Shown here: piece after piece, positions 10,067 through 45,056 of the stretch
How positions within the stretch are numbered: the stretch's first letter is position 1
Layout of the letters: every line of letters begins with the position of its first letter
IMG/VR virus record: IMGVR_UViG_3300027985_000918
Location: 310,001-374,000 of that record
Length of the DNA: 64,000 nucleotides
Reading direction: 5' to 3' (one strand)
Made by a program: the position numbers and the translations under genes
The notes under the pieces: generated by a model
Told to the model about the DNA's origin: nothing
Database searches by the model: none
What the model saw: the letters and a program-made list of their open reading frames with translations, nothing else

Positions 10067-11203
10067 TTGGACAAAAACACCACCCTAATGCGCCTGCTCT
10101 CCCGTTTCTGTGTGGATCACGAGGTTGGAGATCACACCTACGTTGTCGGCGGAGCCGTCCGGGACTTCTTGCTGGGGCGCCCTATCAAAGACGTGGACGT
10201 GGTCACGGACACCGTCAACGGAGGGCTGACCAGCGAGCTGCTGGCCCAGAGTCTGGCCCAGCAGTTCCAGGGATCTACCATCGTGACCAACAACTACGGG
10301 GTCGCCATCCTCACCCTGAGAGGCTGCGTCTACGAGGGGGTATGCCTAGACGGGATGGTCGTCGAAATTGCCAACGCCCGGAAAGAGTCCTATGGGGGGA
10401 AGACCGGAAAAGGCTACAAGCCTCACATGGTCGAACCGGCCTCCATTCAGGAGGATGTGGTCCGACGGGAGTTCCGGTTCAACACCCTCCTATGGAGGAT
10501 GGCCGACATCCAAGAAGGGCCGGTGGCGGCAAGAGTTCTTGACCTGACCGGCATGGGCCTGACGGACATCCGAGAGGGACAGATGGTGTGCCCGACGGAC
10601 CCCAACAAGGTGTTCACCGACGACCCCACTCGGATGCTCAGGGCGGTCAAGTTCGGCCTACGGCTCGGGTTCAACCTGGGGAGCCTGGAACTGGCCTGCA
10701 TCCAAACCCACGCCAGGGCGCTGCTGAACGTCCCCCCGAATGCGGTGGCAGTCATCCTGCTGAACGACATCTTCGGGGTGGACGTCCGGGAAGGTCTGAG
10801 GATGCTGGAACACATGGAGCTGCTTCCCGTGGTGAGAGAGATGGCGGATACCAACCCAGCCTTTCGCACCACCCTGACCCACTGGGCACGGCCCCGGGTC
10901 CATGCCATGCTGGATCTGGTCGAGGTGGGCCGCCTCCCCGTATCCGGGGGTCTGGAGATCATGCTGGGGGAGGAAGGAATGGGGAAGCTACGGCTCGCCG
11001 TTCATGAAATGGACGACCCGATGGCTCTGAGATTCGTCGAGGCGCTTCGCCAGCCGGGAAAGGTGATGGACACCCAAAAGGTGGCCATGCAGAGAGGCCT
11101 CACGGGGGCTCGGATGGGGGAGATCACGGTGGAAGCCCGGAACCTCCTACTGGAATCACCCAGCCTGTTCCGAGAGGGTCTCACGCAGGCGATGCTCCGG
11201 TGA
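10067..11203 (+). CDS. Class II tRNA nucleotidyltransferase (CCA-adding / poly(A) polymerase family)
   Basis: YVVGGAVRDFLLGRPIKDVDV, ARKESY, DVVRREFRFN, DDPTRMLRAVKF. Confidence 0.9.
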   Translation: MDKNTTLMRLLSRFCVDHEVGDHTYVVGGAVRDFLLGRPIKDVDVVTDTVNGGLTSELLAQSLAQQFQGSTIVTNNYGVAILTLRGCVYEGVCLDGMVVEIANARKESYGGKTGKGYKPHMVEPASIQEDVVRREFRFNTLLWRMADIQEGPVAARVLDLTGMGLTDIREGQMVCPTDPNKVFTDDPTRMLRAVKFGLRLGFNLGSLELACIQTHARALLNVPPNAVAVILLNDIFGVDVREGLRMLEHMELLPVVREMADTNPAFRTTLTHWARPRVHAMLDLVEVGRLPVSGGLEIMLGEEGMGKLRLAVHEMDDPMALRFVEALRQPGKVMDTQKVAMQRGLTGARMGEITVEARNLLLESPSLFREGLTQAMLR

Positions 11204-11849
11204 GTCGAGGGTCTTCCGGACCCTCGACTCGCTGGACAACCACCCCATGCTTTTCCAAGTACGACACCCCGTTCTCCCCAGCGTAGCCCCCCTCCACGAT
11301 GTACACACCCTTGATCCCAGCATGGTGGATCAGCTTCGAGCACATCATGCAGGGCTCTCCCGTCACAATGAGCCAAGCCCCCGCCGTTGCCACCCCTGCG
11401 GCTGCGGCGTTGCAAATGACATTCATCTCAGCGTGGTGGCAACCGATCTCCACCCGGGTCCCCGATTTGACACCGGGGTACTTGAAGGCCAGCTCTTGCC
11501 GGAACTCTTCCGCAGCTTCGGAGTTGCCGAAACTGAACTCCTGGTCCATCCCCCCGGGGGCCCATCCCCTAAGACGGCCCGTCGGGATGTGCTCAACGAG
11601 CCATTCCATAGGAGGATTCGAGACCGGGACCACCCTGGTATCCTTCAGAGGATAGCCGTCCCTCTCGCAGAAATGACCCCCACACAAGGGGCCGTCGGCC
11701 CCCCGAGGACCACCGTTGTAGCCGTCCATGAGGATGACGTTCCGCTTGATGTCGAGCAGAAAAGCGCCGAACTTCCTCCGGGGACAGTTACTGGCCTTGG
11801 CCAGAGAAAGGCACTGCTCAATGCGGATGGCAAGGTGCTTGGGGTTCAT
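11181..11849 (-). CDS. dCMP deaminase
   Basis: SNCPRRKFGA, GYNG, HAEMN, PCMMC zinc motifs. Confidence 0.93.
   Translation of the reverse strand: MNPKHLAIRIEQCLSLAKASNCPRRKFGAFLLDIKRNVILMDGYNGGPRGADGPLCGGHFCERDGYPLKDTRVVPVSNPPMEWLVEHIPTGRLRGWAPGGMDQEFSFGNSEAAEEFRQELAFKYPGVKSGTRVEIGCHHAEMNVICNAAAAGVATAGAWLIVTGEPCMMCSKLIHHAGIKGVYIVEGGYAGENGVSYLEKHGVVVQRVEGPEDPRLTGASPA
11202..11230. terminator. Perfect 12-bp hairpin at the junction of convergent genes
   Basis: GAGTCGAGGGTC-ttccg-GACCCTCGACTC; no U-tract. Confidence 0.45.
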
Positions 11850-11878
11850 GAGGATATCTCCCGGAGGTCTTGGGGGGT

Positions 11879-12229
11879 CTACCGACGGCCCTCAGTGGCT
11901 TCTACCACCTGCCAAGGCTCGGCCCCTGACAACGAACAGAGGGGCTCCCTTTGAAGGGAAGGGGTCTCCAGCAGGCCATCACACCGCTCGTTCAGGATGA
12001 ACAGAACCTCTTGGATGTCGATGTTGTGGGCTTTGAGCATTGAGAGCAGGACGAACAGTACGTCCCCCGCCTCTGCAGCAGGAGACGAGTCTCCCTTTCC
12101 CCGCAAAGATTCAATGAACTCAGAGACTTCGAGGTGGAGATAGCAACCCCCGTTGCTCCAGTTACGCTCCCACCGATGGTGGATGCAGACGGAGATACAC
12201 TTCTCGGCCACTTCCTCAACAGTTAGCAT
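11879..12229 (-). CDS. MazG-like nucleotide pyrophosphohydrolase
   Basis: LHLEVSEFIE...EAGDVLFVLL all-alpha NTP-PPase motif; GGAGG RBS. Confidence 0.75.
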   Translation of the reverse strand: MLTVEEVAEKCISVCIHHRWERNWSNGGCYLHLEVSEFIESLRGKGDSSPAAEAGDVLFVLLSMLKAHNIDIQEVLFILNERCDGLLETPSLQREPLCSLSGAEPWQVVEATEGRR

Positions 12230-29048: not shown

Positions 29049-29921
29049 TCAGCGGGTGACGGTCAGGCGGGCCAGGCCACGGGGGTTGTAGGCCCCGATG
29101 CCGAGGTTCTCAAACACAGAGAACCCGATGGTGCGGGCCTTGGGGTCGTCCGCCGAGAGGACGGTCAGCTCGGTACGGACCGGAATGCGACCGAAGTGCT
29201 CGGCTTCGCAGCACAGGTACACGGTCCCGACCGGAACGAGGCGGCTGACGACGATCTGGGCGCCGTAGATGACACCCATGAGACCCGTCTTCAGCAGGAC
29301 CGCCTGGGTTTCGATGTCCAGAATGTCCCGACCGAACTTACGGATGTCGGCATAGTCACGGGCATTCATGTACACCCGGGCCACACGGAGGTCCCAGCGT
29401 TCGATCAGGGCAAAGGCATCGGCCAGCACCGCACCGGAGATCGGAGCGATGACGGGGATGTCCGGGTTAAGCTGACCCGGCAGGCTGTCGAACCCGGCGG
29501 TGGCGATGGAGTCCATGATGGCGAAGACACGCTCGTCCTCGGCAGCCTGGACCTGCGCCCGAGCCAGATCCTGAGCACGCTCGATGAGATCGAAACGGCG
29601 CTCCTTGATCTGGGTGAGCGGGATCTCCGGGTTCGAGGCGATCTCGAACAGGGGGAAGATCACACGCCTGGGCTTCGTGATCGCCAGGATGTTCTGACCC
29701 TCTTCCCCTAGGACAAAGGCGGTGACATCCGGGTCCTTGTCGTAGATGGGGAGGGCCCCATCCGGAAGCTGTTCCACAAGGAACGTCTTGCGCCCGACGG
29801 CAGCGTAGTCACGCCGGGTGCGGAGGGGCGACGTCATGCTGGCGGCCAACTTCGCCCGTCCCATCGGGGTCTGGATCAGCTCGCCAATCAGACGCTGCTT
29901 AACTGCGTTGGTGATGGCCAT
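29049..29921 (-). CDS. Major capsid protein (HK97 fold, no delta domain)
   Basis: Position after protease, scaffold and decoration genes; PLRTRRDY...LPDGALPIYDKD...FEIASNPEI...AEDERVF...NPRG; strong RBS and terminator. Confidence 0.88.
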   Translation of the reverse strand: MAITNAVKQRLIGELIQTPMGRAKLAASMTSPLRTRRDYAAVGRKTFLVEQLPDGALPIYDKDPDVTAFVLGEEGQNILAITKPRRVIFPLFEIASNPEIPLTQIKERRFDLIERAQDLARAQVQAAEDERVFAIMDSIATAGFDSLPGQLNPDIPVIAPISGAVLADAFALIERWDLRVARVYMNARDYADIRKFGRDILDIETQAVLLKTGLMGVIYGAQIVVSRLVPVGTVYLCCEAEHFGRIPVRTELTVLSADDPKARTIGFSVFENLGIGAYNPRGLARLTVTR

Positions 29922-32393: not shown

Positions 32394-33944
32394 TCAGTGC
32401 TGTCCCCGGAGGGCCTGGCCCCTCCGAGACATGATGTTGCCGAGCCGCAGGAACACCCTGGCCTCAGCGGTACTGGGCTTGCGCCCAAGGGCGGAGGCAC
32501 AAGCCCCCAGGTAATCACGACCCGTACTGTACCCACTGGGGGCTCCCGCCCTCAGAACGGCCCGGTACAAGTTCCTATCGATCTCGATGCCAGCAGCCTT
32601 GTCCAGCGTTGCCACCCCCTCAATGAGAGCGATGTCCGAGCTGGCCGTCCTGGCCAATACCCGGATAGCAGCTTCGTGCTGGACGGTATCGTTGGGTGCC
32701 GTGGAGTCGTTGACCGCACGGGATGTGTCTTCCTCCCGCATCTGGTCCTTGATCTTCCGCTTCACCCGATCCTGCATGTACTGGGTGAGCTCTTCCTCGG
32801 TCTCCTGGAGGGGAGACCCAGACTGAGCCGGGGCAACAGCGCCACCCTCACCTTCGTCCTCACCCACCTCGTCGCCCTCATCCTCCCATCCGGCAATGAA
32901 ACTGTCTCTCCCCACCGCAAGAACATCCGAGTCCGTCAGAGGACCAGATGTGACCCTTCCCACCACACGAGCGTCCTGGTGGAAACGATCCTCCAAGATG
33001 CTAATGTCCGTGGCGGAACGCCCCATTGTGGCAGCACGCTGCATCTGGTTGGCATCCCACTCCGGGGGCGGGGAGTTGAGAACCTTGGCAGCCCTGTCGA
33101 GCATAACCTGGGTAGGTTCCAACACGTTCCGCAGGACTGCTCCCGTGAACGCTGGAGTTTCCACCCAACTTGCCTCGATGAACCGCACACCGCCAGTGGG
33201 ATCGATGCTATCGTGCCCACACAACTCCGCCACACGGTGCTGGCGGCCCAACTCGTCATAGAACACGGTGCCCTTGGCATACTTGATATGGGCACACATC
33301 TCAGTTTCGTCGGCAGCCCAGTGTCCACACTTGGTACAAATCGTGCCATCCACCGTACAGCCCATGGACATAGTGCCCATCTTTCCGGACTCAATGGCCT
33401 TAACCAGCTCAGTGTGCTTGCGGTCCGTGGCAACGAGGATGTCAATGTAAATGCTATCCCCGATATCACGGGCCACGGCGTCGATGATCCGACCCCGGGA
33501 CTGTGATTCGATCTGAACGTGCTCAACGAAGTTGTGCCCGCCCACAAACGTCTCGAACGCCTTGAGCAAAACCGGGCGGCTCCAGGCATCGAGGTTGTTG
33601 TTGATGAACTTGTCGCAGACCGGCTTTACCCGGTAATCCCCATACCTGCGGTTCACTCGGAACCCATCCTCCATCTGGTGGCCGAGCTTAACCCCCTGGG
33701 GGGACTCGACATCGACCGACGCCACAATGGTGGCATGGGTCAGGAGGAAATTCTTGGGGTTGAACGGCTTACCCAAGAGTTGAGTGGCCCGTTCCACCAG
33801 GTTGCTGGCCATGGCGACCTTGGTGGGCCTGAAATCCTTGGCGATCTTCCCGCTCTGCCTTGCAGCAGCTCGGACATTGCCCCACTGCTTCCGCCCAATT
33901 GACGGATTGGCGATTGTGGCATAGGCGTACTTCATCATCGGCAT
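32394..33944 (-). CDS. Prohead (capsid maturation) serine protease with Zn-finger insert
   Basis: NNNLDAW, NFVEH, GRIID, TMSMGC, CTKCG...CAH, EASWVETPAF; canonical gene position. Confidence 0.8.
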   Translation of the reverse strand: MPMMKYAYATIANPSIGRKQWGNVRAAARQSGKIAKDFRPTKVAMASNLVERATQLLGKPFNPKNFLLTHATIVASVDVESPQGVKLGHQMEDGFRVNRRYGDYRVKPVCDKFINNNLDAWSRPVLLKAFETFVGGHNFVEHVQIESQSRGRIIDAVARDIGDSIYIDILVATDRKHTELVKAIESGKMGTMSMGCTVDGTICTKCGHWAADETEMCAHIKYAKGTVFYDELGRQHRVAELCGHDSIDPTGGVRFIEASWVETPAFTGAVLRNVLEPTQVMLDRAAKVLNSPPPEWDANQMQRAATMGRSATDISILEDRFHQDARVVGRVTSGPLTDSDVLAVGRDSFIAGWEDEGDEVGEDEGEGGAVAPAQSGSPLQETEEELTQYMQDRVKRKIKDQMREEDTSRAVNDSTAPNDTVQHEAAIRVLARTASSDIALIEGVATLDKAAGIEIDRNLYRAVLRAGAPSGYSTGRDYLGACASALGRKPSTAEARVFLRLGNIMSRRGQALRGQH

Positions 33945-35362: not shown

Positions 35363-38300
35363 TCAACTGGGTAGTTCCTTGTCCTCTGTTACGGCCCTCA
35401 TATACGCCCGGAACGCATCCGGTCTCATCTCCCGGATGCGCTTCCTCTCCTTGGGGTCGGTGACGTTTTTGAGCCATTCCTGCTTCTTCTGTTCCGGGGT
35501 CTTCTCAGGATTCTGCTTGTCTTCCCGGACCTTCCGACCGTCATCCTTCGGCTCGACCTTCTGATCGAGAACCGAGAGGTCTCCAGTCTCACTCACATGG
35601 CGGACCCGAGCTACGTTCGGATTCATCTTGTCGGGCACCGTTCCCGACAGCTTCTCTGCGGTAGACATCGTCAAACGCAGATCCTGAACCTGGACTCCCT
35701 CCCCTGCCTTTAGGCAGCTCTCCAGATCCTCCTGGGTCACAGCCTTGGCGATGCAGTGTGCCAGCTCATCGGCGGCCCCCTTGAGGGCCTTGTCGTCTGT
35801 CTTGGCCTGGCGTACCCTTTCGGCCAGACTCTCAGGGTCTGTGGTAGGCTTAGAAGTGGGCTTGGTTTTACCCTTCCCCTTCTCATCGGTCTCCTTCCCC
35901 TTGTGGAAAGCGTTCAGGAACCCTTGGGTTACAGTCATGTCGTTTAGGGCCAGCATCTTGAGCACATCTCGGGCGAACGCTCTCCCCTCTGCCGTGATGT
36001 GGTTGTCCTCATCATCATCCGTAAGAACCCTACCGATGGCCTCATAGGGGCTATTATCCCCTGCCACAGTTTCCACCAATTCATCGTCCGACATGATGTC
36101 CAGAGCATCCCTGACCTTGACCCTCCCCTCAGGGCTGTACAAATCAGAAGCCCCCTTCAACAGTACGTCTTCGTCCCCAAGGACAGCCAGAGACTGAGCC
36201 ATCCTCTGGAAGCTCTTAGACATCTCCTCCGTGCCGGAGAGCTGGCGACCTTGTACAGCAGCGGCCAACATCATCCCCGACTTGATAGCATCCAGCTCGA
36301 TGTACTCGTCTGATTCGGGGTCGGCCTTATCCAATTCCTGCTTGAGCTGGTCGGCAGCAGCATCCAGAAGCCCCGGCCCCGCCTTACGGAACTGGTGGTA
36401 AGCCTCAAGAGACCGCCCATGCAGCTCCTCCGCCGTTTTGTTGTTGTTGTTGACCGCCCGGCCACCAACAAGACGAGGGTTAGCCACCACCTTCGTGGCG
36501 AACACATACTCAGCCAGGCGCTTCGCTCGCACCTGGGGGGCAGCCTCCGCCAACCCCTTGGTCCCCCTCTTGAGAGCAGACTGAGCCCTCTTCAAGACAT
36601 CCACAGTCAACCCCCCATCCTCCGCACGAGCGCTCAGAAGCTGTCCCATGTGAGAAGCATAAGCCTCTGCCAGCTCCTGCTTAGCGGAGGCCACATTCTT
36701 CTCGTACTCTGCCTTAAGCCTCTGGATATGATCCCGAACCCCCTGAGCACTCTCCTGATCTTCCGGAACCTCTGGGTACTCCGGCTCTTCCGGCCACAAA
36801 TCACCCAGGTCCATTCCCTGGACGGCCTTGTCGAAATCAGCAAGCTGTCTCTGCTGCTTGGCCCTCTGCTGTTCCCGTTCCTTAACCTTTCGCTCTTCCG
36901 CTTGCTGGGCAGCGACCTCTGGATCTTCTTCCTCCTCACCTTCCCCGCCCCCTTCAGCCCTCCTCTTAGCGGATTCTTCATCGGGAGCCGACGTGGGCTG
37001 CTTGGACTTGGGAGGCCAAACACCCCAGCCGTTCTCCGTCTGCCAGTAGTCTCCCTCTTTGTGTTCAGCATCCTGTGGGACCTTCCCAGCAATGCGAATA
37101 GGAGGACCTGACAAGACCATCAACATCCGGTCACCGGCATCCGTGATAGCGGCAACCTTCTTGTAGTTCAGGGAGAGATCGGGATCCTTCTCAGCCTTCC
37201 CCGTGTCGTCCACGTCCGGGTCATACTCGTCCATCCGATTGCGACGAAGGTCCTGCCGGGGAGGCTTCTTCGATGGCTTCGGACGATTCATCCGCTCTAC
37301 TTCCTCGTTCTCCTTCTCCCCCTCATCTTTGGTCGCCTGCCGGTACAGGTAAGCCGAAGCCACTCTCCCGGCTGCCTTCCTGATCCACTCTGCAGCCAGG
37401 CGGAGGGACGTACTTGCCCCCTTGCCCAGCCGGACCGGATCTTCGTCAGAGCCCTTCTTGTCAAGACGTTTCATGACCTCGCCGGAGGCGAGGTACTTGT
37501 CGGCCAAACCGGGGACCAGGTACTGGCTCTTAAGGGTCGAGGGTTCATGGCCCACCGCCTTGGCGGTCTCTTTTAGAGCCTGCTCAAATTCCTTCTTGAG
37601 CAGCTTCCCCCGCTCCTTCTTATCCTCGGGCAGCTCCCCACCCTTGGAGCGGATATCCTTGAGACGGCTCTGCATCTCGGCATTGGCGTGGTACCCCCGC
37701 ATGTCCTTAGCGGTGATGCCGAAAGGCTCCAGGTACTCGTTCACGTCTTCGGCAGAGATATCCCCCGTTAGGCTGTCATTCTCCCCCTTTCCCTCTTTGG
37801 CGGCCTTGAGAGCCGACACCAAAGCCGGATCACTGACAACCTTCTCGTGACTCACGCCGGACTTGCCGACGTACTTGACGGTGACTTTGTTGCCGGAAAA
37901 GGTCAGATGCTTGACCTTCCAACCTGTGACCCCATAGTGCCCATCCTCAGCAGACTCCTCATTGCCGACCCGCTCGTATGTCTCGTCCATGAGGCCAACA
38001 ATCAGGGCCTTTAGCCGGGTGTCCTCGTCCTTGGACTTCAAATCCTTCGACACCTGCGCCCTCAGCTTGGTGATGGATCCACGTAGCTTCTCTACCTGCT
38101 TAGCCTTCTCTCGGTTCCGGAGTTCAATCTGGCCCTCGCTGTACTCGTAGACGGTCGTGGTCCCTTTGCCATCGGCCTTGGGGACCTCCTTCTTCTTCTG
38201 ATACTTGGCGGACACCCGAAGAACGGCCTCCTTAGAAAGCCCCCCCGCTGTTGCGGCGGCCTCATCGTAGCGGAGCTTGAACAGTTTGATCTCCATGTCC

Positions 38301-40483
38301 TGCTTGCGCCCCTTGGGCACTGGCTCCACGATCACCACAGGTTCCCCAGACTTCTCGTCAGTCTTGAACTCTTTGATAACCCCCTTCTTATTCTTGTACT
38401 TGCCGTACAAGACGGGGTCACCGACATTCAGGGTGAAGGTTTTGGCGATCCGCAGAGCTGCCTCCTTCATCCACTCGTTATCCTCCGGGGGGTACAGCTC
38501 CTGGAGGTGTGGCATCTCATCCTGGAGGCCCGTGTAGACCCCCTTGAGCAAAGTCTTCTTCGCCTGGGTGTTCAGGGCCCTATGGACCCTGTTCCATGTG
38601 GTGGAATTCTCCAGGGCACGGTCCAGGAGGGACATCGAGGCTCCCGCCCAGAGGTTTCCGGCCCCCCCCTGCTCATGGACGTAATCAATCACTTCGTCCA
38701 CGATCTGCTGCATGAACGCCCGGATCTCAGTCGCTTCGTTGTGGTAGGTGTCCTCGTCAAGGTGACTGATTCCCCCTGGGGCAAGAAGGTCCCGGAGGTG
38801 GGTGATTTCATGAATCAGAACCGAGTACACCTCCTTGGCGACCCGGGCCTCATTGTCCAGAAACGCCTTGGGGGACTTGGCAGCATCGAGAGTGACCGTC
38901 ATCTGGTACTTGAACGCATGGCTCCCCTGAACCCTCTGCGTAACTGCCCCCCCTACCACATACTGCCGGGGACCGCTGAAACCCAAGGCCTTGTTTCTGG
39001 ACTCAACCTTGACATCCACAGCCACAAGGGCGCCCTTCACATCCTGGACGACGTACTTAGCGACGACAAAACCCCATGTGTCCGGCCGGAACCCCCGCTG
39101 GGAGTACAGAGAGTCAGAAGGGTCATCTCGAAACCGTAGGTGCTGGGGCAGCACCTGCATGATCTTGTCCGTCAGCCCCTTGGCCTCGACCTTGTTGATC
39201 GGAATAGGACGAGCAGCCCTCTTCTTGGTGTACGCCTGTGCCACTCGGAACACTGCCCCAGCGGTACGCTGCCAGCTTTCTGAGGTCATCCCCATCCGCT
39301 TAGCCGGCACCTGTCCTTTGCCCACCGTCCCCTGTCCCCGGGCAAGCCTCATAAGGGGCTTGCCATACAAACCGGACATGCTCAGCGCCCTCTGCATCCT
39401 GAACTTGCCCACATCGGACAGCTTCTCGGGGGCCGACATGAAGGCAACGAAAGACTCTGCAAAGTCCTCCCTCTCGTTGGTCTTGGCGTACTCAGTGGGC
39501 ACATGTAGGGCTTCGATAGCCTGGGCCACCGCAGAGTCACCCTGGGCATACTCTGCCACCTGCTCTTCGGTGAGAACAGGGTGGTGGTAGCTAGAGTACG
39601 AGTCCAGCACTCCCATCTTGTCCTGCTTCTGGCGCCATGCCCGGGAAAGAACCTGGTCGAACCTCTCAGTCCCAGGAGTCACCCCCTGGTTCTCCTCGAC
39701 GTGCTTCTGGAACCAGGACCGCAGAGCCTTATTCCGGCTGAGCCGCTTAGCGATCTGCTTCAGATGGTAGACGTTAGCATTCCCCATCCAGAAGGTCAGA
39801 TCTTCTATGAGCCCCCGAAAATCCTGCTGGGCCTCGGAGCCCATCTCCAGAAAGGGGTCGGAGCTGCTGTACTTCTCCATGCCTGCACGGAGCTTGTGAA
39901 CCTGAGGCATCCCCCAGACCTCAATCTCGTCGAAGGACCAGGAACCAGTCGGGATCGGACCCTCCCACTCAGTGTCGAGACCGTCGAGGTATTCAAGGGT
40001 GGTGTGGGGGCGGTAAACCGTCCAGCTATCCGTTACCTCGACCCCAATGTCCTGGATAGCCGACTTGAGACGGTCCCGAAGCTCTGCCATGCGGTGACTG
40101 AATCGAATGGGGAGAATAGCAACCCGCCGCTGCTGGGATTCATGGGTGAAGTAGTCCAACCCCTCCAGTTTGGCCTGTACGGGCCCCCTCAGTTCTTCGG
40201 ACACCACCCGCTGGCAGGTCTCGATGAACTCGTCCTCATGACCCTTGACGTTGCCAACGTAGAGCAGAGTGACGTGGGGCGGACTCTTGTCGTTACCCGA
40301 CTTTTTCACCGGAAACTGGCTGGAAATCCCCCGGGGTAGAGGAATGAACAGCCCTGTCCACTCCGTGCTGTCGCCGGTCTTTTTGCCGTCATCGGGACCG
40401 GCGTGCCTTTTAGCCCAATCAGCCTTGACCTGCTGCCGGACGGCCAATCTGCGAGCCTGTGCTTGAAGAATAGGGTGCTCCAC
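35363..40483 (-). CDS. 1706-aa multidomain virion protein: 2H phosphoesterase, zincin metallopeptidase(s), SH3-like, topoisomerase IB, helical C-terminus
   Basis: PHVTL and PHTTL; TEYAKTNEREDFAESF; HEITH...EIRAF; VGDPVLYGKYKNKKG; YERVGN, VGKSG, AKDMR, VGH, SQYL. Directly downstream of portal. Confidence 0.88.
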   Translation of the reverse strand: MEHPILQAQARRLAVRQQVKADWAKRHAGPDDGKKTGDSTEWTGLFIPLPRGISSQFPVKKSGNDKSPPHVTLLYVGNVKGHEDEFIETCQRVVSEELRGPVQAKLEGLDYFTHESQQRRVAILPIRFSHRMAELRDRLKSAIQDIGVEVTDSWTVYRPHTTLEYLDGLDTEWEGPIPTGSWSFDEIEVWGMPQVHKLRAGMEKYSSSDPFLEMGSEAQQDFRGLIEDLTFWMGNANVYHLKQIAKRLSRNKALRSWFQKHVEENQGVTPGTERFDQVLSRAWRQKQDKMGVLDSYSSYHHPVLTEEQVAEYAQGDSAVAQAIEALHVPTEYAKTNEREDFAESFVAFMSAPEKLSDVGKFRMQRALSMSGLYGKPLMRLARGQGTVGKGQVPAKRMGMTSESWQRTAGAVFRVAQAYTKKRAARPIPINKVEAKGLTDKIMQVLPQHLRFRDDPSDSLYSQRGFRPDTWGFVVAKYVVQDVKGALVAVDVKVESRNKALGFSGPRQYVVGGAVTQRVQGSHAFKYQMTVTLDAAKSPKAFLDNEARVAKEVYSVLIHEITHLRDLLAPGGISHLDEDTYHNEATEIRAFMQQIVDEVIDYVHEQGGAGNLWAGASMSLLDRALENSTTWNRVHRALNTQAKKTLLKGVYTGLQDEMPHLQELYPPEDNEWMKEAALRIAKTFTLNVGDPVLYGKYKNKKGVIKEFKTDEKSGEPVVIVEPVPKGRKQDMEIKLFKLRYDEAAATAGGLSKEAVLRVSAKYQKKKEVPKADGKGTTTVYEYSEGQIELRNREKAKQVEKLRGSITKLRAQVSKDLKSKDEDTRLKALIVGLMDETYERVGNEESAEDGHYGVTGWKVKHLTFSGNKVTVKYVGKSGVSHEKVVSDPALVSALKAAKEGKGENDSLTGDISAEDVNEYLEPFGITAKDMRGYHANAEMQSRLKDIRSKGGELPEDKKERGKLLKKEFEQALKETAKAVGHEPSTLKSQYLVPGLADKYLASGEVMKRLDKKGSDEDPVRLGKGASTSLRLAAEWIRKAAGRVASAYLYRQATKDEGEKENEEVERMNRPKPSKKPPRQDLRRNRMDEYDPDVDDTGKAEKDPDLSLNYKKVAAITDAGDRMLMVLSGPPIRIAGKVPQDAEHKEGDYWQTENGWGVWPPKSKQPTSAPDEESAKRRAEGGGEGEEEEDPEVAAQQAEERKVKEREQQRAKQQRQLADFDKAVQGMDLGDLWPEEPEYPEVPEDQESAQGVRDHIQRLKAEYEKNVASAKQELAEAYASHMGQLLSARAEDGGLTVDVLKRAQSALKRGTKGLAEAAPQVRAKRLAEYVFATKVVANPRLVGGRAVNNNNKTAEELHGRSLEAYHQFRKAGPGLLDAAADQLKQELDKADPESDEYIELDAIKSGMMLAAAVQGRQLSGTEEMSKSFQRMAQSLAVLGDEDVLLKGASDLYSPEGRVKVRDALDIMSDDELVETVAGDNSPYEAIGRVLTDDDEDNHITAEGRAFARDVLKMLALNDMTVTQGFLNAFHKGKETDEKGKGKTKPTSKPTTDPESLAERVRQAKTDDKALKGAADELAHCIAKAVTQEDLESCLKAGEGVQVQDLRLTMSTAEKLSGTVPDKMNPNVARVRHVSETGDLSVLDQKVEPKDDGRKVREDKQNPEKTPEQKKQEWLKNVTDPKERKRIREMRPDAFRAYMRAVTEDKELPS

Positions 40484-40501: not shown

Positions 40502-40532
40502 CTACCTTCGGCAGAGCTATAAACAAATCACA
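40502..40532 (-). promoter_or_regulatory. Putative class-I (late) promoter
   Basis: TGT-GATTTGTT-TAT-N13-GTAG, upstream of the giant protein. Confidence 0.6.
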
Positions 40533-42435
40533 GCGCCGGTGATGGCCTGTGCCCCTTGAAGCGGGCCTCCTTCCCGGACACTGGCTTAGTCAGGCCACTC
40601 TCCAGCTCACCCTGAAGCTCGGGATCAATGTGGGTGTCGCTCGCCAGAGCTTCCTCAGCGGCCTCTCGGATAGCTCTCTTGATGGCTTCCTGGAAAGTAT
40701 CCTTGAGGAAACGGTGAATCTCGTTCTGCTGTACTGAGCCAAACCGGGACATGCCCTCTTCCTTCGGTTTGGTATACTTCAGACCCAGGACATCGGCCAC
40801 TCGCTGGACAGCGTCGGAGGACTCCGCCAAGGCGTCCCCGACACGGCTGTAGACCGCCCGCAAGACTTCATTGAACGTAGCGTCCTGGAGTGTAAAAGTG
40901 TCCCTCTCCAGCTTCTCTCGGACGGTGTCGGCATCAAGGTTCAGCAAATCCAGAATGGTCTCGATGTCCAAACTCCCCTTCTGGTAGAGATTGAACAATG
41001 TGTCGAATGTCTCCTGGTTATCCCGCAAAGCCAAACGGGTGAACGACAGCCTCGGATGGATGACCACCTCTTCGCCGTCTTCGTCGTACTCGATGAACCC
41101 CATGCGGCGGCACATCGGCTCCAAAAGTTGCCGGTCTACGAAATCCTGAAGCAGCTCACGCAGCAACAGATAGCGGACGTTGATCACCTCCAAGTGGATG
41201 CGGTCCCCACTGTAGCTCGACTCACCGGACAGCAAAGATTCAGTGACCCCGAGACCGGCATAAAGCTGCCGGTCAGTGAGGTCGTACTCGGAGGACAGGT
41301 CCAGCAAGCGGGAGTCCGCCCCCCCGCCCCGCTCTTCCCAGTTGACCTGGAAGTTCGTGATGACACTATAGTCCGGGTCCTGAAGAGCCAGATCCACCTG
41401 GTCCCGCAGCTCTTCCGTCTGCTCGGCGTTCATGTCCTCCGCCCAGATGATGCGGTAGGGGGTCATGTGCCGGGAGGCGATGGATGTCTGGGCCTGGCGG
41501 AGTTTATCCCGGAACACCAGGACTCGGAGACACCGCTGAAGGATAGACTTCCCCCGAGCCTCGTACTGACTCTTCTTGCGGGCCAGGTAGTGGCAGAAGC
41601 TGCCCGCCTCAGGGGTGGTGTTCAAGGGGATGTTCTCACCCCGGAGGACGTAGTCCACAACCTCGGTAGGCATGGACTCGACCACCTCTCGGGCTCGGAG
41701 ATCTCCCTGAGTAGCCCTCTCGATGATGGCCTTGGTCTTGCTATCGGGAATCAGCTCAATGAGGCGCTTGTCCGTGAAGGGGAACGCCTCCATCTGAATC
41801 TGCTCGGGGGGAAGAACTCGGAGAGCCGACCAGCCCTTGTAATTCTTCTTCACCCACTGGACCATCCTCTTTCGGGCATCCGGGTAAGGCCGCTCTTCCT
41901 CTACCAGGGACCCGTCAGCAGCAATCTCACGATATGTCTCATGAGTCACCTCCCGGGGCATATCTGGACTCGTGTCCTCTGCGAACACGAATACCTCCCC
42001 GACGAGGTAATATTCGTGGACCACCTCCAAAAGACGGTGCAGCAGACCAATATAGCGAACCCACCGCTCACAGAACCTCATGGACGCCTCAGCCAGCTTC
42101 TTGTTCTTGGCCTTAGGCTTGCGGAGGCGTAGCTTGGAAAGGGGGAGTTCCCCGTGCAGATCGATGGCCTGACCCACAAAGGGGTCGTTGTCGTAAAAGA
42201 AGCGGAAATAGTTCCGCATCTCATCTACGGACTGAGGCAGCTCCAGGAAATCTGGGCTCAGCTCGGGACTGTAGAAGTTGCCCCCCGAGCCAACCATGGC
42301 CCCACCCGTAGCAGGGTAGGCCATCTTGAGGCGGGCTGTTCCGGTAACGAGCTTGCCGGGTTTGCCTACCTTGACCTTGTCCCGCTCGGGAAGGGTAGCC
42401 ACCTTGACTGTATGCTTGGGATCGTTCTTCTTCAT
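40528..42435 (-). CDS. Portal protein
   Basis: FYDNDPFVGQAIDLHGELP, GEVFVF, YEARGKSILQRC, LYAGLGV; downstream of terminase. Confidence 0.82.
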   Translation of the reverse strand: MKKNDPKHTVKVATLPERDKVKVGKPGKLVTGTARLKMAYPATGGAMVGSGGNFYSPELSPDFLELPQSVDEMRNYFRFFYDNDPFVGQAIDLHGELPLSKLRLRKPKAKNKKLAEASMRFCERWVRYIGLLHRLLEVVHEYYLVGEVFVFAEDTSPDMPREVTHETYREIAADGSLVEEERPYPDARKRMVQWVKKNYKGWSALRVLPPEQIQMEAFPFTDKRLIELIPDSKTKAIIERATQGDLRAREVVESMPTEVVDYVLRGENIPLNTTPEAGSFCHYLARKKSQYEARGKSILQRCLRVLVFRDKLRQAQTSIASRHMTPYRIIWAEDMNAEQTEELRDQVDLALQDPDYSVITNFQVNWEERGGGADSRLLDLSSEYDLTDRQLYAGLGVTESLLSGESSYSGDRIHLEVINVRYLLLRELLQDFVDRQLLEPMCRRMGFIEYDEDGEEVVIHPRLSFTRLALRDNQETFDTLFNLYQKGSLDIETILDLLNLDADTVREKLERDTFTLQDATFNEVLRAVYSRVGDALAESSDAVQRVADVLGLKYTKPKEEGMSRFGSVQQNEIHRFLKDTFQEAIKRAIREAAEEALASDTHIDPELQGELESGLTKPVSGKEARFKGHRPSPAL

Positions 42436-43058: not shown

Positions 43059-45056
43059 TCACCTTCCTCGGATACTTCCCCGGTTGGACCGGGAGGGTTG
43101 GCGATCCGGGCTCGATCCGCCCCCCTGCATGGCACGGATGCGAGCCTTGCGGGCCTGCTTAGCGGTCAAAGCCCTCTGGGGGAGCATCCCCGGCGGCAAG
43201 TTGTTGTTCCGGCCAGCAATGTGCTTGGGCTTGATGATGTGCTGGCTGGCACACCAGACCATGCGAACAAGTGCATCCGACATGTCGTCGTGCTTACCTT
43301 TGATGTTTGGAGCCTCCACAGTCACCAGATACTTGGTTTGGTACTCTGCCTGGAGTTCCAGCAGCTCTTCGATGTACGGGCAATGCTCAGCGGCTTCGGG
43401 GTCCCCCGTCTTTGACGGCTTGGGCCAGTCGTACAACCTCAGCCTCTTGTCCCACATGAAGTCCTTGAAGTTACGGAACATCTGGGAGCTGAGCTGCTTG
43501 GTGAAATGCTCAGACTGGAGCATCTTCAAACCCCGGTTATGGAGGGCCTGCTCAAACACGATCCCCGCCCACTGATCGAAAATCCCCTCTGCGAACATGA
43601 ACCGCTTGGAAAAGCCGGTAACCCAGTCGGCCACATCGTCGAACTCCAGCCTCTCCAAATGGGCGTACTCACCCTCCCCAGCCCGAATCTGTTCAACGAC
43701 ATCCAGCTCGATCGTACCGTCGTCCCCCAGATGCCCGATGGCAATGGCGCTGCCATCCCCCGCAAGAGCGAAGTCGAGACCAATGTAATGGGGCTGGCGA
43801 GACCGCCCCCGGAGCTTCGGGCGAAGCTCAGTGTCCACACAGGCCAGGAGGTCGTCCTCGTCCTCAATCCACCCCCGGGTGCGATCCGTGAAGTGCCCAC
43901 CGTATTCGGTGAAAAACACAACGGGGTCGGCCCGGTATGCCTGCTCCAACTCATCCCCATCCACGAAAGGGTTGACCTCCCAAGTTGGAGCCTGGATGGC
44001 GATCATGTTGGGGGCGCCACTCATAGCAAGTTGGAATTGCTTGTAGAACTCCCCCTGCCTTCCCAGAGGAGAGCTGATCCCGATCATGCGGCCTTCGACC
44101 GGACCGCCCGCAGCGGGAGAAAAAGCAGACATGGACGGTTTTACAGCGTTCCACACCTCGGTGGCCGAGGACTGGCCCGCATCCGTAAAGTGGGCCATCT
44201 CATCAAGGATAATCACAATGTTACCGGCACCCCGGAGACCTTTGGCTCGGCAGGGACGGAACGTCACACGGATGGTAGCATTGGCCTTTTCATCATCCAC
44301 ATACCGGCCATACCTCTCGATGTCCTTCGGGGTCTGGAACCTGGCATAGGACATGGTATTGTTGGCGGTATACGGGGCAAAGAAAGCACAGTCTTTGTAA
44401 TACCCTGCCACCTTGCTATAAAGGATGCCAGCCTGTTCCTTATCGGTCGCTACCGAAATTAGCTGGATGGGTTCACCTGCGGGCAGTCCATAGTATTCCT
44501 GGGGATCGCCTTTGGAAATCAGCTTATATGTCTCGTAAGCACCGATGATTGAAGCCAACTGGGTTTTGCCCGAACGACGGCCCACCGACAAGATCATGAC
44601 CCGCAGCTCCGTTCCCGGAGCCGTCCTTACACTGCATTGTCCCTTCTCAAACAGGTAATTTAGGTACTCAACCTCCGACATGAACTTCCACTTGCGGCGC
44701 TTCCAGTCAGAGACCATCACCACGTTCTCGTACAGACCCCCCCAATCATCCTGGCTCATGACGTGAGGGAACGTGTTCGCCAGACTGAGGGCCTGCCTCG
44801 GGCGACGGTTCTTGAGGGTGATCTCATCGTACTGGGGGTGACTCCGGGGAACGGGCTTGGAAAGATCCAGACCGTAGGGGTTGTCGTCCAGGGGCATCCC
44901 ATAGTGCAACTTGAGGATGATCCTCTGCACTGGGTACAGCTCCATCCCCAGACCCCATCGGGACTCAGCAAACGTGAGGATGTCTGCTACAGAGGTAGAC
45001 CCGGTGCCCTTCTGGGCGGCACCAATGTCAAGGGCTAGGCTGGCGAGATTCGGCAT
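43059..45056 (-). CDS. terL: Terminase large subunit
   Basis: LYPVQ, Walker A GRRSGKT, Walker B IILDEMAHF, ISSP, nuclease motifs IGLDFA and HDDMSDA. Confidence 0.93.
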   Translation of the reverse strand: MPNLASLALDIGAAQKGTGSTSVADILTFAESRWGLGMELYPVQRIILKLHYGMPLDDNPYGLDLSKPVPRSHPQYDEITLKNRRPRQALSLANTFPHVMSQDDWGGLYENVVMVSDWKRRKWKFMSEVEYLNYLFEKGQCSVRTAPGTELRVMILSVGRRSGKTQLASIIGAYETYKLISKGDPQEYYGLPAGEPIQLISVATDKEQAGILYSKVAGYYKDCAFFAPYTANNTMSYARFQTPKDIERYGRYVDDEKANATIRVTFRPCRAKGLRGAGNIVIILDEMAHFTDAGQSSATEVWNAVKPSMSAFSPAAGGPVEGRMIGISSPLGRQGEFYKQFQLAMSGAPNMIAIQAPTWEVNPFVDGDELEQAYRADPVVFFTEYGGHFTDRTRGWIEDEDDLLACVDTELRPKLRGRSRQPHYIGLDFALAGDGSAIAIGHLGDDGTIELDVVEQIRAGEGEYAHLERLEFDDVADWVTGFSKRFMFAEGIFDQWAGIVFEQALHNRGLKMLQSEHFTKQLSSQMFRNFKDFMWDKRLRLYDWPKPSKTGDPEAAEHCPYIEELLELQAEYQTKYLVTVEAPNIKGKHDDMSDALVRMVWCASQHIIKPKHIAGRNNNLPPGMLPQRALTAKQARKARIRAMQGGGSSPDRQPSRSNRGSIRGR

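What the first reader, a model, noticed from the sequence alone, without database searches (positions are those of the whole stretch)
39900..40360. Acb1-like 2H phosphoesterase positioned for delivery with the genome
Seen: two HxT motifs (PHVTL at 40274, PHTTL at 40004) 90 codons apart, right after a removable-looking leader. Known: T4 Acb1 is a 2H phosphoesterase that degrades CBASS cyclic nucleotides; other 2H enzymes process RNA 2',3'-cyclic phosphates. Inference: pre-made anti-CBASS activity, complementing the Csx20-like gene.
Basis: partly seen in the sequence, partly recalled or inferred. Interest (0 to 1): 0.7.

Follow-up and report, generated by a model that had tools for sequence, protein, structure and literature searches.

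The report
LigT-like 2H domain, giant head protein
The two HxT motifs are real and form a LigT/ThpR-type (not Acb1-type) 2H phosphoesterase domain at the start of a 1,706-residue multi-enzyme protein that a 402-kb phage encodes right after its portal gene, so it is probably a virion-carried enzyme that opens 2',3'-cyclic phosphate RNA ends rather than a dedicated anti-CBASS nuclease.

Summary
H70-V-T72 and H160-T-T162 lie 90 codons apart on the minus strand and are the invariant catalytic motifs of a confidently folded 2H phosphoesterase domain (aa ~28-205).

It is the N-terminal module of a 1,706-aa ORF (35363-40483, minus). That ORF also carries an HExxHxxD metallopeptidase-like module, a poxvirus-like type IB topoisomerase with its full catalytic pentad, and a conserved ~650-aa C-terminal region. 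The ORF sits between the portal and the prohead protease of a 402-kb phage.

The domain is not an Acb1 family member:
- Pfam Acb1 scores 11.5 bits against a cut-off of 27.
- Acb1 ranks 38th structurally (Z 9.0), against Z 13-15 for the cellular 2',3'-cyclic phosphodiesterases of the LigT/ThpR type.

In relatives, this 2H family is preferentially fused to CCA/poly(A) nucleotidyltransferase, PAP2 and HAD_SAK_1 phosphatase modules. The phage itself encodes 30 tRNAs, RtcB, two RNA ligases and a CCA-type enzyme.

The best reading is a probably head-packaged RNA 2',3'-cyclic-phosphate healing module of a polyvalent protein. Degradation of immune nucleotide signals remains a live rival. 2H domains in injected polyvalent proteins were already described in 2017. 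The topoisomerase-centred scaffold appears undescribed.

The parts
35363..40483 (-). Whole gene: 1,706-aa polyvalent-type protein (P0001). GTG start with a GGAGGA Shine-Dalgarno site upstream.
   Evidence: 120 homologues
40403..40483 (-). N-terminal peptide aa 1-27 (predicted helix aa 4-24). It is shared by orthologous giant proteins whose next domain differs. Possible docking or targeting peptide; removal not shown.
39869..40402 (-). 2H phosphoesterase domain aa ~28-205, LigT/ThpR-like. The finding itself.
40268..40276 (-). HxT motif 1 (H70-V-T72)
39998..40006 (-). HxT motif 2 (H160-T-T162), followed by family-invariant Y165
39329..39706 (-). Module A (aa ~260-385), shared with P0021, P0013, P0064 and P0192. 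It holds a short TNExEDFAESF motif like the Glu-helix of lethal-factor-type zincins, but no HExxH upstream. Function not assigned.
38504..39061 (-). Module B (aa ~475-660): metallopeptidase-like, with invariant H558-E-x-x-H562-x-x-D565 and E586. This matches the phage-type polyvalent MPTase motif. The fold is not confirmed.
38249..38467 (-). Small conserved module (aa ~673-745, LYGKYKNKxG), present in most family members
37454..38248 (-). Type IB topoisomerase catalytic domain (aa ~746-1010), with pentad R838, K874, R929, H979, Y988
35366..37366 (-). Conserved charged C-terminal region (aa ~1040-1706), shared across the family. Function unknown; possibly a virion-anchoring or ejection part.
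40528..42435 (-). Portal protein gene, immediately upstream
43059..45056 (-). Large terminase gene
32394..33944 (-). Head maturation protease gene, downstream
29049..29921 (-). Major head protein gene
10067..11203 (+). Stand-alone PolyA_pol/CCA-type nucleotidyltransferase (head domain only, no HD domain). Candidate partner in trans.

Best explanation
The region encodes a catalytically intact LigT/ThpR-like 2H phosphoesterase. It is the first enzymatic module of a giant polyvalent protein with this order: N-terminal peptide, 2H, module A, HExxHxxD metallopeptidase-like module, small conserved module, type IB topoisomerase, ~650-aa C-terminal region. The gene lies in the head-assembly operon directly after the portal gene of a 402-kb phage. 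Most likely mechanism, with status of each step: the protein is made late, built into the prohead and released into the next host together with the DNA (inferred); it may be cut into modules by its own metallopeptidase or the prohead protease (inferred); the 2H module uses its two His-x-Thr motifs for metal-independent hydrolysis of 2',3'-cyclic phosphate ends on RNA, above all tRNAs cut by host defence or stress ribonucleases (inferred). The ends could then be finished by a phosphatase and rebuilt or sealed by the phage's CCA-type nucleotidyltransferase, RNA ligases or RtcB. Shown here: the motifs, the fold, the family, the architecture, the conserved gene position, and the RNA-repair gene complement of this genome. 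Inferred: packaging, processing and substrate.
For: Fold and family: Pfam 2_5_RNA_ligase2 46 bits. NCBIfam ThpR model E 1e-8. The family profile hits Pyrococcus, Deinococcus and Thermus LigT-type phosphodiesterases at E 5e-7 to 2e-3. AF2 pLDDT is 90. VIA-align gives Z 15.1 for drCPDase, 14.3 for YjcG, 13.8 for Thermus 1iuh and 13.1 for E. coli LigT. Swiss-Prot models of RNA 2',3'-cyclic phosphodiesterases come top. hhalign covers 135 columns with E. coli ThpR.
Context: the order terminase, two small genes, portal, polyvalent gene(s), two small genes, protease and (where the contig reaches that far) major capsid gene is conserved in L002, L003, L004 and a JGI contig. Stand-alone copies of this 2H family also sit directly after the portal in L012 and L013/L014.
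Polyvalent hallmarks: an HExxH motif with Asp three residues after it, as described for phage-type polyvalent MPTases, and ART-PolyVal in close relatives.
RNA-repair association: among 119 TopoIB homologues, 2H co-occurs with PolyA_pol (17/30 vs 19/89, OR 4.8, p 5e-4) and with PAP2 (9/30 vs 5/89, OR 7.2, p 1e-3). Among 85 mid-sized members of the 2H family, PolyA_pol occurs in 15 and HAD_SAK_1 (RNA-repair HAD) in 7. In L004 the same locus carries PolyA_pol, HAD_SAK_1, RNA ligase and the cyclic-phosphate-processing cREC domain, and no 2H was detected in its TopoIB protein P0043.
This genome: 30 tRNAs, RtcB, two RNA ligases, one CCA-type enzyme lacking an HD domain, and a single 2H copy.
Against: No biochemical or virion-proteome data exist for any member, and no cultured phage carries a close homologue. 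Domains of polyvalent proteins are a mixed bag, so fusion partners need not share a pathway, and the co-occurrence counts are not phylogenetically independent. This particular protein lacks fused PolyA_pol, PAP2 and ligase modules. 2H is never fused with RNA ligase in the set (0/30), echoing Iyer et al. 2017, who for that reason preferred an RNase or signal-degrading role. The ThpR equivalog cut-off is not reached (35 vs 65.7 bits). Motif 2 has Tyr at His+5, as T4 Acb1 does. One stand-alone family member lies in a replication/recombination neighbourhood instead (L018). No MuF domain or other known packaging domain was detected.
Confidence: 0.45

Rival explanations
1. Functional analogue of Acb1: the 2H module degrades host immune nucleotide signals (CBASS cyclic di/trinucleotides, type III CRISPR cyclic oligoadenylates, or 2'-5'-linked oligonucleotides). 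It would act either on arrival or late in infection, when the head operon is expressed.
For: 2H enzymes have evolved this role repeatedly. Acb1, the penguinpox cGAMP phosphodiesterase and the viral 2',5'-phosphodiesterases are all recovered as structural relatives (Z 9-12). Iyer et al. 2017 predicted exactly this for 2H domains of polyvalent proteins, and noted that they never pair with RNA ligases, which also holds here (0/30). Motif 2 (YxPHxTLxY) is the one stretch that hhalign matches to T4 Acb1. One family member reaches 23 bits on the Acb1 model.
Against: The Acb1 Pfam model scores below its cut-off (11.5 bits) and finds nothing in the genome. No Acb1 chain is found with the family profile at E<=10. 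Acb1 is rank 38 structurally, and rank 48 among viral models. His-His spacing is 90 here against 69 in Acb1 (H44/H113). No equivalent of the compact ~150-aa fold with a C-terminal Trp lid was shown. The fusion partners are RNA-end enzymes, not signalling-related domains.
Confidence: 0.25
2. The 2H module works in cis with the fused type IB topoisomerase on the phage's own nucleic acid. Type IB enzymes that cleave at an embedded ribonucleotide leave a 2',3'-cyclic phosphate nick. This is established for vaccinia and eukaryotic Top1 and is cited from my own knowledge. The 2H, cREC, phosphatase and ligase modules would heal and seal such ends.
For: TopoIB plus the C-terminal region is the invariant core, while 2H, cREC, PAP2, HAD, RNA ligase and nucleotidyltransferase modules are swapped around it. 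All five topoisomerase catalytic residues are intact.
Against: This is purely inferential. Stand-alone 2H genes, and 2H fusions without TopoIB, are common in the family. The ART, Fic, GNAT, NUDIX and carbonic anhydrase modules in relatives do not fit a single repair pathway.
Confidence: 0.1
3. Offensive RNase: like Usb1, the domain trims or cleaves host RNAs and leaves cyclic phosphate ends, helping host shut-off.
For: Usb1 structures score Z 12.5-12.7, close to LigT, and are high in the Swiss-Prot search. Iyer et al. 2017 offered this as one option.
Against: Sequence profiles find LigT-type enzymes and not Usb1. Association with CCA-type nucleotidyltransferase and phosphatases fits repair better than attack. 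The phage invests heavily in tRNAs and ligases.
Confidence: 0.1
4. On the delivery question only: the protein is a late cytoplasmic enzyme or an assembly factor that is not packaged. Its position after the portal gene would then reflect co-regulation only.
For: No MuF or other known packaging domain was detected. There is no proteomic evidence. One stand-alone family member lies among replication genes.
Against: The slot between portal and protease is strictly conserved in every long contig examined. The protein has polyvalent-type MPTase and ART-PolyVal hallmarks. A conserved N-terminal peptide is shared by orthologues irrespective of the next domain. Structural relatives of the 2H domain occur in actinophage proteins annotated as capsid morphogenesis or structural proteins.
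Confidence: 0.3

Closest known systems
Bacterial/archaeal RNA 2',3'-cyclic phosphodiesterase ThpR/LigT (E. coli 5ldm, D. radiodurans 5h7e, T. thermophilus 1iuh, Pyrococcus 1vdx/2fyh)
   Same: Two HxT motifs in a two-lobed fold. These are the best sequence-profile and structural matches. His-His spacing is similar: 90 here; about 82 in E. coli ThpR, a figure from my own knowledge.
   Different: The score is below the TIGR02258 equivalog cut-off. There is a family-specific N-terminal DGKKTGD stretch, and Tyr rather than the LigT-type residue five positions after the second His. The domain is embedded in a giant phage head-operon protein instead of being a small cellular enzyme.
Phage anti-CBASS nuclease Acb1 (T4 gp57B; Erwinia phage FBB1, PDB 7t26/7t27)
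   Same: Same 2H superfamily, HxT/HxT tetrad and metal-independent chemistry through a cyclic phosphate intermediate. A local YxPHxTLxY match lies at motif 2.
   Different: Acb1 is a compact ~150-aa stand-alone protein with His-His spacing 69 and a C-terminal lid. Here the Pfam Acb1 model fails, structural similarity is Z 9.0 at rank 38, and hhalign aligns only 19 columns.
2H domains of phage-type polyvalent proteins and MuF fusions (Iyer, Burroughs, Anand, de Souza, Aravind 2017, PMC5512222)
   Same: A 2H domain inside a large multi-enzyme protein, with zincin-like metallopeptidase (HExxH + Asp) and ART relatives, encoded among portal/terminase head genes and predicted to be injected.
   Different: That paper does not describe topoisomerase-centred polyvalent proteins; 'topoisomerase' occurs only in its reference list. 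It also reported no link of polyvalent 2H domains to RNA repair. Here 2H is enriched with CCA-type nucleotidyltransferase, PAP2 and HAD_SAK_1 modules. No MuF domain was detected.
Poxvirus type IB topoisomerase (variola 2h7f, vaccinia 1a41)
   Same: These are the best solved sequence matches of the topoisomerase module, with all five catalytic residues aligned. The vaccinia enzyme is carried in the virion core (my own knowledge).
   Different: Here the topoisomerase is one module of a 1,706-aa phage protein with unrelated enzymes attached. Packaging is inferred, not shown.
Phage T4 tRNA repair (Pnkp + Rnl1) and the HD domain of E. coli CCA-adding enzyme (my own knowledge)
   Same: Same logic: open a 2',3'-cyclic phosphate, remove the phosphate, then reseal or rebuild the tRNA end to defeat host tRNA nucleases.
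   Different: The enzyme families differ (2H rather than HD or DxD phosphatase). The T4 enzymes are early cytoplasmic proteins, not head-operon products.

Membership tests
2H phosphoesterase superfamily | Two H-x-T/S motifs | tested here: met
   H70-x-T72 and H160-x-T162. They are invariant or nearly invariant in 62 relatives.
2H phosphoesterase superfamily | Two-lobed alpha+beta 2H fold, and a family HMM score above the curated cut-off | tested here: met
   PF13563 scores 46.1 bits against a cut-off of 27. The AF2 model has pLDDT 90. 66 PDB chains score Z>=8, and the listed ones are 2H enzymes.
Acb1 anti-CBASS nuclease (PF23474) | Score above the Pfam gathering threshold | tested here: not met
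   11.5 bits, E 0.25, against a cut-off of 27. The family finds no match anywhere in the genome at E<=1.
Acb1 anti-CBASS nuclease (PF23474) | Compact ~150-aa fold, HxT tetrad spaced ~69 residues apart, closest structural neighbour is Acb1 | tested here: not met
   Spacing is 90 and the core is ~160-175 aa. Acb1 7t26 scores Z 9.0 at rank 38, against Z 15.1 for drCPDase. hhalign aligns 19 columns only.
Acb1 anti-CBASS nuclease (PF23474) | C-terminal lid and aromatic base-stacking residues (Y12, W74, F107, W147 of FBB1 Acb1) | tested here: inconclusive
   No alignment long enough to map these residues was obtained. The family does have invariant aromatics of its own (Y165, W190).
Acb1 anti-CBASS nuclease (PF23474) | Hydrolysis of 3'3'-cGAMP or cyclic trinucleotides | not testable with these tools
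   Needs an enzyme assay.
ThpR/LigT RNA 2',3'-cyclic phosphodiesterase (TIGR02258 equivalog) | Score above the NCBIfam equivalog cut-off | tested here: not met
   35.2 bits against 65.7. It is nevertheless the only NCBIfam hit, at E 1e-8.
ThpR/LigT RNA 2',3'-cyclic phosphodiesterase (TIGR02258 equivalog) | Closest sequence and structural relatives are ThpR/LigT enzymes | tested here: met
ThpR/LigT RNA 2',3'-cyclic phosphodiesterase (TIGR02258 equivalog) | 2',3'-cyclic phosphodiesterase activity on RNA ends | not testable with these tools
   Needs an enzyme assay.
Phage-type polyvalent proteins (Iyer et al. 2017) | Several unrelated enzymatic domains in one large polypeptide | tested here: met
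   2H, HExxH module and TopoIB in 1,706 aa. Relatives add PolyA_pol, PAP2, ART-PolyVal, RNA ligase, NUDIX and GNAT.
Phage-type polyvalent proteins (Iyer et al. 2017) | Zincin-like MPTase domain (HExxH, downstream Glu; the phage type has Asp three residues after the motif) | tested here: inconclusive
   The motif is invariant in 14 relatives (H558, E559, H562, D565, E586) and fits the published description. Pfam gave only 13 bits. The AF2 model (pLDDT 71.6) gave no clear fold match, best Z 6.5.
Phage-type polyvalent proteins (Iyer et al. 2017) | Encoded among virion genes of a portal-terminase phage | tested here: met
Phage-type polyvalent proteins (Iyer et al. 2017) | Physically packaged in the capsid and injected | not testable with these tools
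   No cultured relative or proteome is available.
MuF / SPP1 gp7 minor head proteins (PF04233) | MuF domain detectable | tested here: not met
   No MuF hit in Pfam or PHROGs scans of the whole protein or its segments.
Type IB topoisomerase (PF01028) | Family HMM score above the cut-off and the catalytic pentad R-K-R-H-Y | tested here: met
   105.7 bits against 23.7. R838, K874, R929, H979 and Y988 align to the variola/vaccinia enzyme.

The most novel reading that the evidence does not exclude
A lineage of huge phages packages a type IB topoisomerase-anchored, modular 'end-repair kit' into the capsid. The kit draws on 2H or cREC cyclic phosphodiesterase, PAP2/HAD phosphatase, CCA-type nucleotidyltransferase and RNA ligase modules. 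Repair of 2',3'-cyclic-phosphate ends would then start at the moment of genome entry, before any phage gene is expressed. The ends could be host-cleaved tRNAs or topoisomerase-made nicks at ribonucleotides. This would be the first virion-delivered RNA-repair system, and the first phage counterpart of the encapsidated poxvirus topoisomerase.
Probability: 0.2. Interest if true: 0.75.

Novelty: new variant of a known kind. Interest (0 to 1): 0.45.

Why it matters
The narrow claim, a pre-packaged Acb1, is not supported. What the region points to may be more useful. More than 100 metagenomic giant proteins share an intact poxvirus-like topoisomerase IB and a long C-terminal region, and are encoded after the portal gene in every contig examined. 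They carry interchangeable enzymes for RNA-end chemistry. If they are packaged, phages would deliver ready-made tRNA/RNA repair or signal-degrading enzymes together with a topoisomerase, which extends the idea of injected counter-defence beyond ADP-ribosyltransferases and anti-restriction proteins. It also gives a clean experimental question for the large, uncharacterised 2H subfamily (535 cluster representatives): RNA 2',3'-cyclic ends or immune cyclic oligonucleotides? For annotation, the lesson is practical. Two HxT motifs in a phage do not make an Acb1.

Tried and rejected
- Acb1 membership was rejected on the Pfam score, PDB profile search, hhalign and structural rank.
- PHROGs gave no family for the whole protein, and only weak 'RNA ligase' (2H-type) hits for the N-terminal part.
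- Segments aa 190-480, 980-1350 and 1300-1706 gave no Pfam or NCBIfam hit.
- Language-model look-alike searches for aa 200-440 and 440-700 gave only leads below 0.9: an ATLF-type zincin at 0.75, viral hypothetical clusters at 0.90 and LPD23 at 0.83. They are not used as evidence.
- The AF2 model of the HExxH module (pLDDT 71.6) gave no convincing fold match across 48,161 PDB chains (best Z 6.5). The metallopeptidase call therefore rests on motifs only.
- The N-terminal peptide was searched against the phage's whole six-frame translation to see whether other head proteins share it, as with a T4-style capsid-targeting sequence. Only this gene has it.
- An S-T-E tripeptide at aa 39-41 could resemble a prohead-protease site. 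It lies inside the conserved start of the domain, so I do not propose it as a cleavage site.
- The genes next to the stand-alone PolyA_pol gene are not an RNA-repair cluster: dCMP deaminase, PhoH, VWA.
- A tblastn of the cultured-phage collection found only distant topoisomerase hits in Xanthomonas/Erwinia jumbo phages and one 2H hit in Virus Rctr197k, with no proteome to lean on.
- Literature searches found no description of topoisomerase-IB polyvalent proteins in phages, and nothing on the Burkholderia phage BCSR5 phosphodiesterase structure.
- One neighbourhood look-up failed for lack of a free slot. Two more were uninformative because the contig was short or unannotated.
- Complex prediction with nucleotide ligands was not run. 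The tool gives no verdict for ligands, and any 2H cleft would accept a nucleotide.


Full report
**1. What is at the coordinates**

The window is bases 310001-374000 of a 402,383-bp virus record with direct terminal repeats, about 60% G+C. The finding lies on the minus strand inside one very long ORF, 35363..40483, of 1,706 codons. Its GTG start is preceded by GGAGGA, 44 nt after the stop of the upstream gene.

In this frame P69-H70-V-T72-L and P159-H160-T-T162-L are encoded at 40265-40279 and 39995-40009.

**2. The motifs are a real 2H domain**

- Pfam places aa 65-168 in 2_5_RNA_ligase2 (46 bits, E 7e-12). AKAP7_NLS and LigT_PEase also score above their cut-offs for the isolated N-terminal part.
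- An exhaustive HMMER search of 1.84 billion cluster representatives found 535 relatives at E<=1e-3, of which 115 at E<=1e-30.
- In an alignment of 62 relatives, H70, T72, H160, Y165, G180 and W190 are invariant. T162 is conserved in at least 90%.
- AlphaFold2 with that alignment gave mean pLDDT 90. The model has a helix at aa 4-24, a poorly defined linker, and a compact alpha+beta core from aa 43 to 199.
- The family-conserved sequence starts around aa 28-32 with a DGKKTGD stretch. Many relatives begin there.

**3. Which 2H enzyme it resembles**

Every comparison points to the LigT/ThpR type and away from Acb1.

| Test | LigT/ThpR type | Acb1 |
|---|---|---|
| Pfam model | PF13563: 46.1 bits (cut-off 27) | 11.5 bits, E 0.25 (cut-off 27) |
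| Model searched in whole genome | one match, this gene | no match at E<=1 |
| Family profile against all PDB sequences | Pyrococcus, Deinococcus, Thermus at E 5e-7 to 2e-3 | no chain even at E<=10 |
| NCBIfam | ThpR equivalog model is the only hit: E 1e-8, 35 bits (cut-off 65.7) | none |
| VIA-align re-alignment of Foldseek hits | drCPDase Z 15.1, YjcG 14.3, Thermus 1iuh 13.8, Pyrococcus 13.3, E. coli LigT 13.1 | 7t26 Z 9.0, rank 38 |
| hhalign with the family profile | E. coli ThpR: 135 columns, both motifs | T4 Acb1: 19 columns around motif 2 |

Other 2H enzymes fall in between in the structural ranking. Usb1 and AKAP18 score about 12.5-13, and the viral 2',5'-phosphodiesterases 11-12. The penguinpox cGAMP phosphodiesterase scores 9.0, level with Acb1. 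Reviewed AlphaFold models give the same order. In the viral structure library Acb1 of phage PaBG is rank 48.

According to the Acb1 paper, that enzyme is a compact ~150-residue protein with H44/H113 and a C-terminal lid. Here the His-His spacing is 90.

So this is a 2H enzyme of the LigT/ThpR kind, but a distinct subfamily. It is not an Acb1 family member. It is invariant in this family and is also present in T4 Acb1.

**4. What the domain is part of**

The ORF has at least seven segments:

1. The 27-residue N-terminal peptide.
2. The 2H domain.
3. Module A (aa ~260-385). It is shared with a few relatives and holds a short motif like the Glu-helix of lethal-factor-type zincins, but no HExxH. 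I assign no function.
4. Module B (aa ~475-660), with invariant H558-E-x-x-H562-x-x-D565 and E586.
5. A small conserved module (aa ~673-745).
6. A type IB topoisomerase (Pfam 105.7 bits). Its best solved relatives are the variola and vaccinia enzymes, and all five catalytic residues align (R838, K874, R929, H979, Y988).
7. A charged ~650-residue C-terminal region conserved across the family.

The motif of module B is exactly what Iyer et al. (2017) describe for the commonest metallopeptidase of phage-type polyvalent proteins, an Asp three residues after HExxH. Its fold could not be confirmed.

**5. Genomic setting**

On the minus strand the order is:

- large terminase (43059-45056)
- a small ORF
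- portal (40528-42435)
- this gene
- two small ORFs
- head maturation protease (32394-33944)
- further ORFs
- major head protein (29049-29921)

The same order recurs in every long contig I examined for relatives. In one of them the gene is split into a 2H...ART-PolyVal protein and a DUF5661-TopoIB protein. Two stand-alone members of this 2H family (189 and 212 aa) also lie directly after the portal gene, followed by PolyA_pol/ART-PolyVal giants. A third sits among replication genes, and two look-ups were uninformative.

The slot between portal and protease is the classical place for head-internal, ejected proteins. Iyer et al. use this argument for packaging of polyvalent proteins.

The 27-residue N-terminal peptide is shared by orthologues whose next domain is different (P0012, P0014, P0019, P0123), and by no other protein of this phage. 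That fits a docking or targeting role. Removal is not shown. Packaging therefore remains an inference, to which I give about 0.65-0.7.

**6. What the domain probably does**

A word-indexed search found 120 giant relatives. They share the topoisomerase and C-terminal region and carry interchangeable extra modules: PolyA_pol (CCA/poly(A) nucleotidyltransferase), 2H, PAP2, HAD_SAK_1, RNA ligase, cREC (cyclic-phosphate-processing receiver), tRNA_lig_CPD, ART-PolyVal, NUDIX, GNAT, inteins and others.

With a family HMM, 30 of 119 non-self relatives carry this 2H domain, at varying positions.

| 2H co-occurs with | With 2H | Without 2H | Odds ratio | p |
|---|---|---|---|---|
| PolyA_pol | 17/30 | 19/89 | 4.8 | 5e-4 |
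| PAP2 | 9/30 | 5/89 | 7.2 | 1e-3 |
| RNA ligase | 0/30 | 5/89 | 0 | 0.33 |

These counts come and are not phylogenetically corrected.

Among 85 mid-sized members of the 2H family, PolyA_pol occurs in 15, DUF5661 in 12, TopoIB in 7 and HAD_SAK_1 in 7. In locus L004 the same slot holds PolyA_pol, HAD_SAK_1 and a TopoIB-DUF192-RNA ligase-cREC protein, and the family HMM found no 2H domain in that TopoIB protein, P0043.

A cyclic phosphodiesterase, a phosphatase and a CCA-type nucleotidyltransferase are the three activities needed to heal and rebuild an RNA 3' end left as 2',3'-cyclic phosphate. From my own knowledge, the HD domain of the E. coli CCA-adding enzyme combines the first two with the third.

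The phage itself carries 30 tRNA genes, an RtcB, two PF09414 RNA ligases (one inside a tRNA cluster) and one PolyA_pol protein without an HD domain. It has a single 2H copy.

I therefore favour RNA 2',3'-cyclic-phosphate end healing, that is tRNA/RNA repair against host ribonuclease defences, at about 0.45.

**7. Rivals**

- **Degradation of immune nucleotide signals (about 0.25).** 2H enzymes have taken this role several times. Iyer et al. proposed it for polyvalent 2H domains, partly because these never pair with RNA ligases, which also holds here.
- **Timing cuts both ways.** A head-operon protein is also abundant in the cytoplasm late in infection. Its position therefore does not prove action on arrival.
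- **Healing of topoisomerase-made cyclic-phosphate nicks (about 0.1).**
- **A Usb1-like offensive RNase (about 0.1).**

Substrate specificity cannot be decided with these tools.

**8. Comparison with what is known, and novelty**

2H domains in virion-associated polyvalent proteins, with the prediction that they counter host nucleotide signalling or act as RNases, were published in 2017. The viral structure search also finds the fold in actinophage proteins annotated as capsid morphogenesis or structural proteins. The general idea is therefore known.

I found two things described nowhere in the searchable literature:

- the topoisomerase-IB-centred scaffold of this huge-phage lineage;
- the enrichment of its 2H modules with RNA-end-repair partners.

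No cultured phage has a close homologue. I rate the finding a new variant of a known kind, with interest 0.45. The specific Acb1/anti-CBASS reading is downgraded, while the surrounding protein family deserves a look of its own.

That model may not be the right one, since the mapping is from my memory.

Noticed in passing
window 37454-38248 (minus), same ORF: An intact poxvirus-like type IB topoisomerase module (R838, K874, R929, H979, Y988). With the ~650-aa C-terminal region it forms the invariant core of more than 100 metagenomic giant proteins, encoded right after the portal gene in every contig examined. I found no paper describing this family.
   Followed up: partly
window 38504-39061 (minus), same ORF: An HExxHxxD...E module invariant in 14 relatives. 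It fits the published motif of phage-type polyvalent metallopeptidases, but its AF2 model found no clear structural match (best Z 6.5).
   Followed up: partly
window 39449-39481 (minus), same ORF: A short TNExEDFAESF motif resembling the zinc-binding Glu helix of lethal-factor-type zincins, with no HExxH upstream. It may be a degenerate or non-catalytic zincin remnant. Only described.
   Followed up: no
window 40403-40483 (minus): The 27-residue N-terminal helix peptide (xDPILxAQARRLxxR...W) is shared by orthologous giant proteins whose following domain differs, and by no other protein in this genome. It is a candidate head-targeting or portal-docking signal.
   Followed up: partly
G000:C1:158402-158477 (complement), outside the window: ARAGORN calls a tRNA with anticodon CTA, which reads the UAG stop codon (labelled tRNA-Pyl). 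The other 29 tRNAs cluster at 9-14 kb and 46-57 kb. It could be a suppressor tRNA. The ORFs examined here read through cleanly under table 11.
   Followed up: no
G000:C1:36239-37516 (+), 11331-11879 (+), 81296-81760 (-); window 10067-11203 (+): The phage carries RtcB, two PF09414 RNA ligases (one inside a tRNA cluster) and a CCA/poly(A)-type nucleotidyltransferase without an HD domain. This is a broad RNA-repair complement.
   Followed up: partly
window 5990-6946 (-), 7063-9552 (-), 11181-11849 (-): A PhoH-like ATPase, a VWA-domain protein of 829 aa and a dCMP/cytidine deaminase flank the nucleotidyltransferase gene. They do not form an RNA-repair cluster.
   Followed up: no
L012:1-4962; proteins P0006, P0014, P0031: Relatives carry inteins with LAGLIDADG endonucleases inside the terminase, portal and polyvalent genes.
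   Followed up: no
L004:5162-14240: In one relative the slot after the portal holds separate PolyA_pol and HAD_SAK_1 genes, followed by a TopoIB-DUF192-RNA ligase-cREC protein. This is a full heal-and-seal set in which cREC is present and no 2H domain was detected in the TopoIB protein.
   Followed up: partly
protein P0122 (823 aa, metagenomic): A family member with two 2H domains flanking a Fic domain. Its second 2H reaches 23 bits on the Acb1 model, the nearest any member came, and still below the cut-off.
   Followed up: no
whole genome G000: Pfam Cas_NE0113, the family I recall as covering Csx20, finds no match at E<=1.
   Followed up: partly
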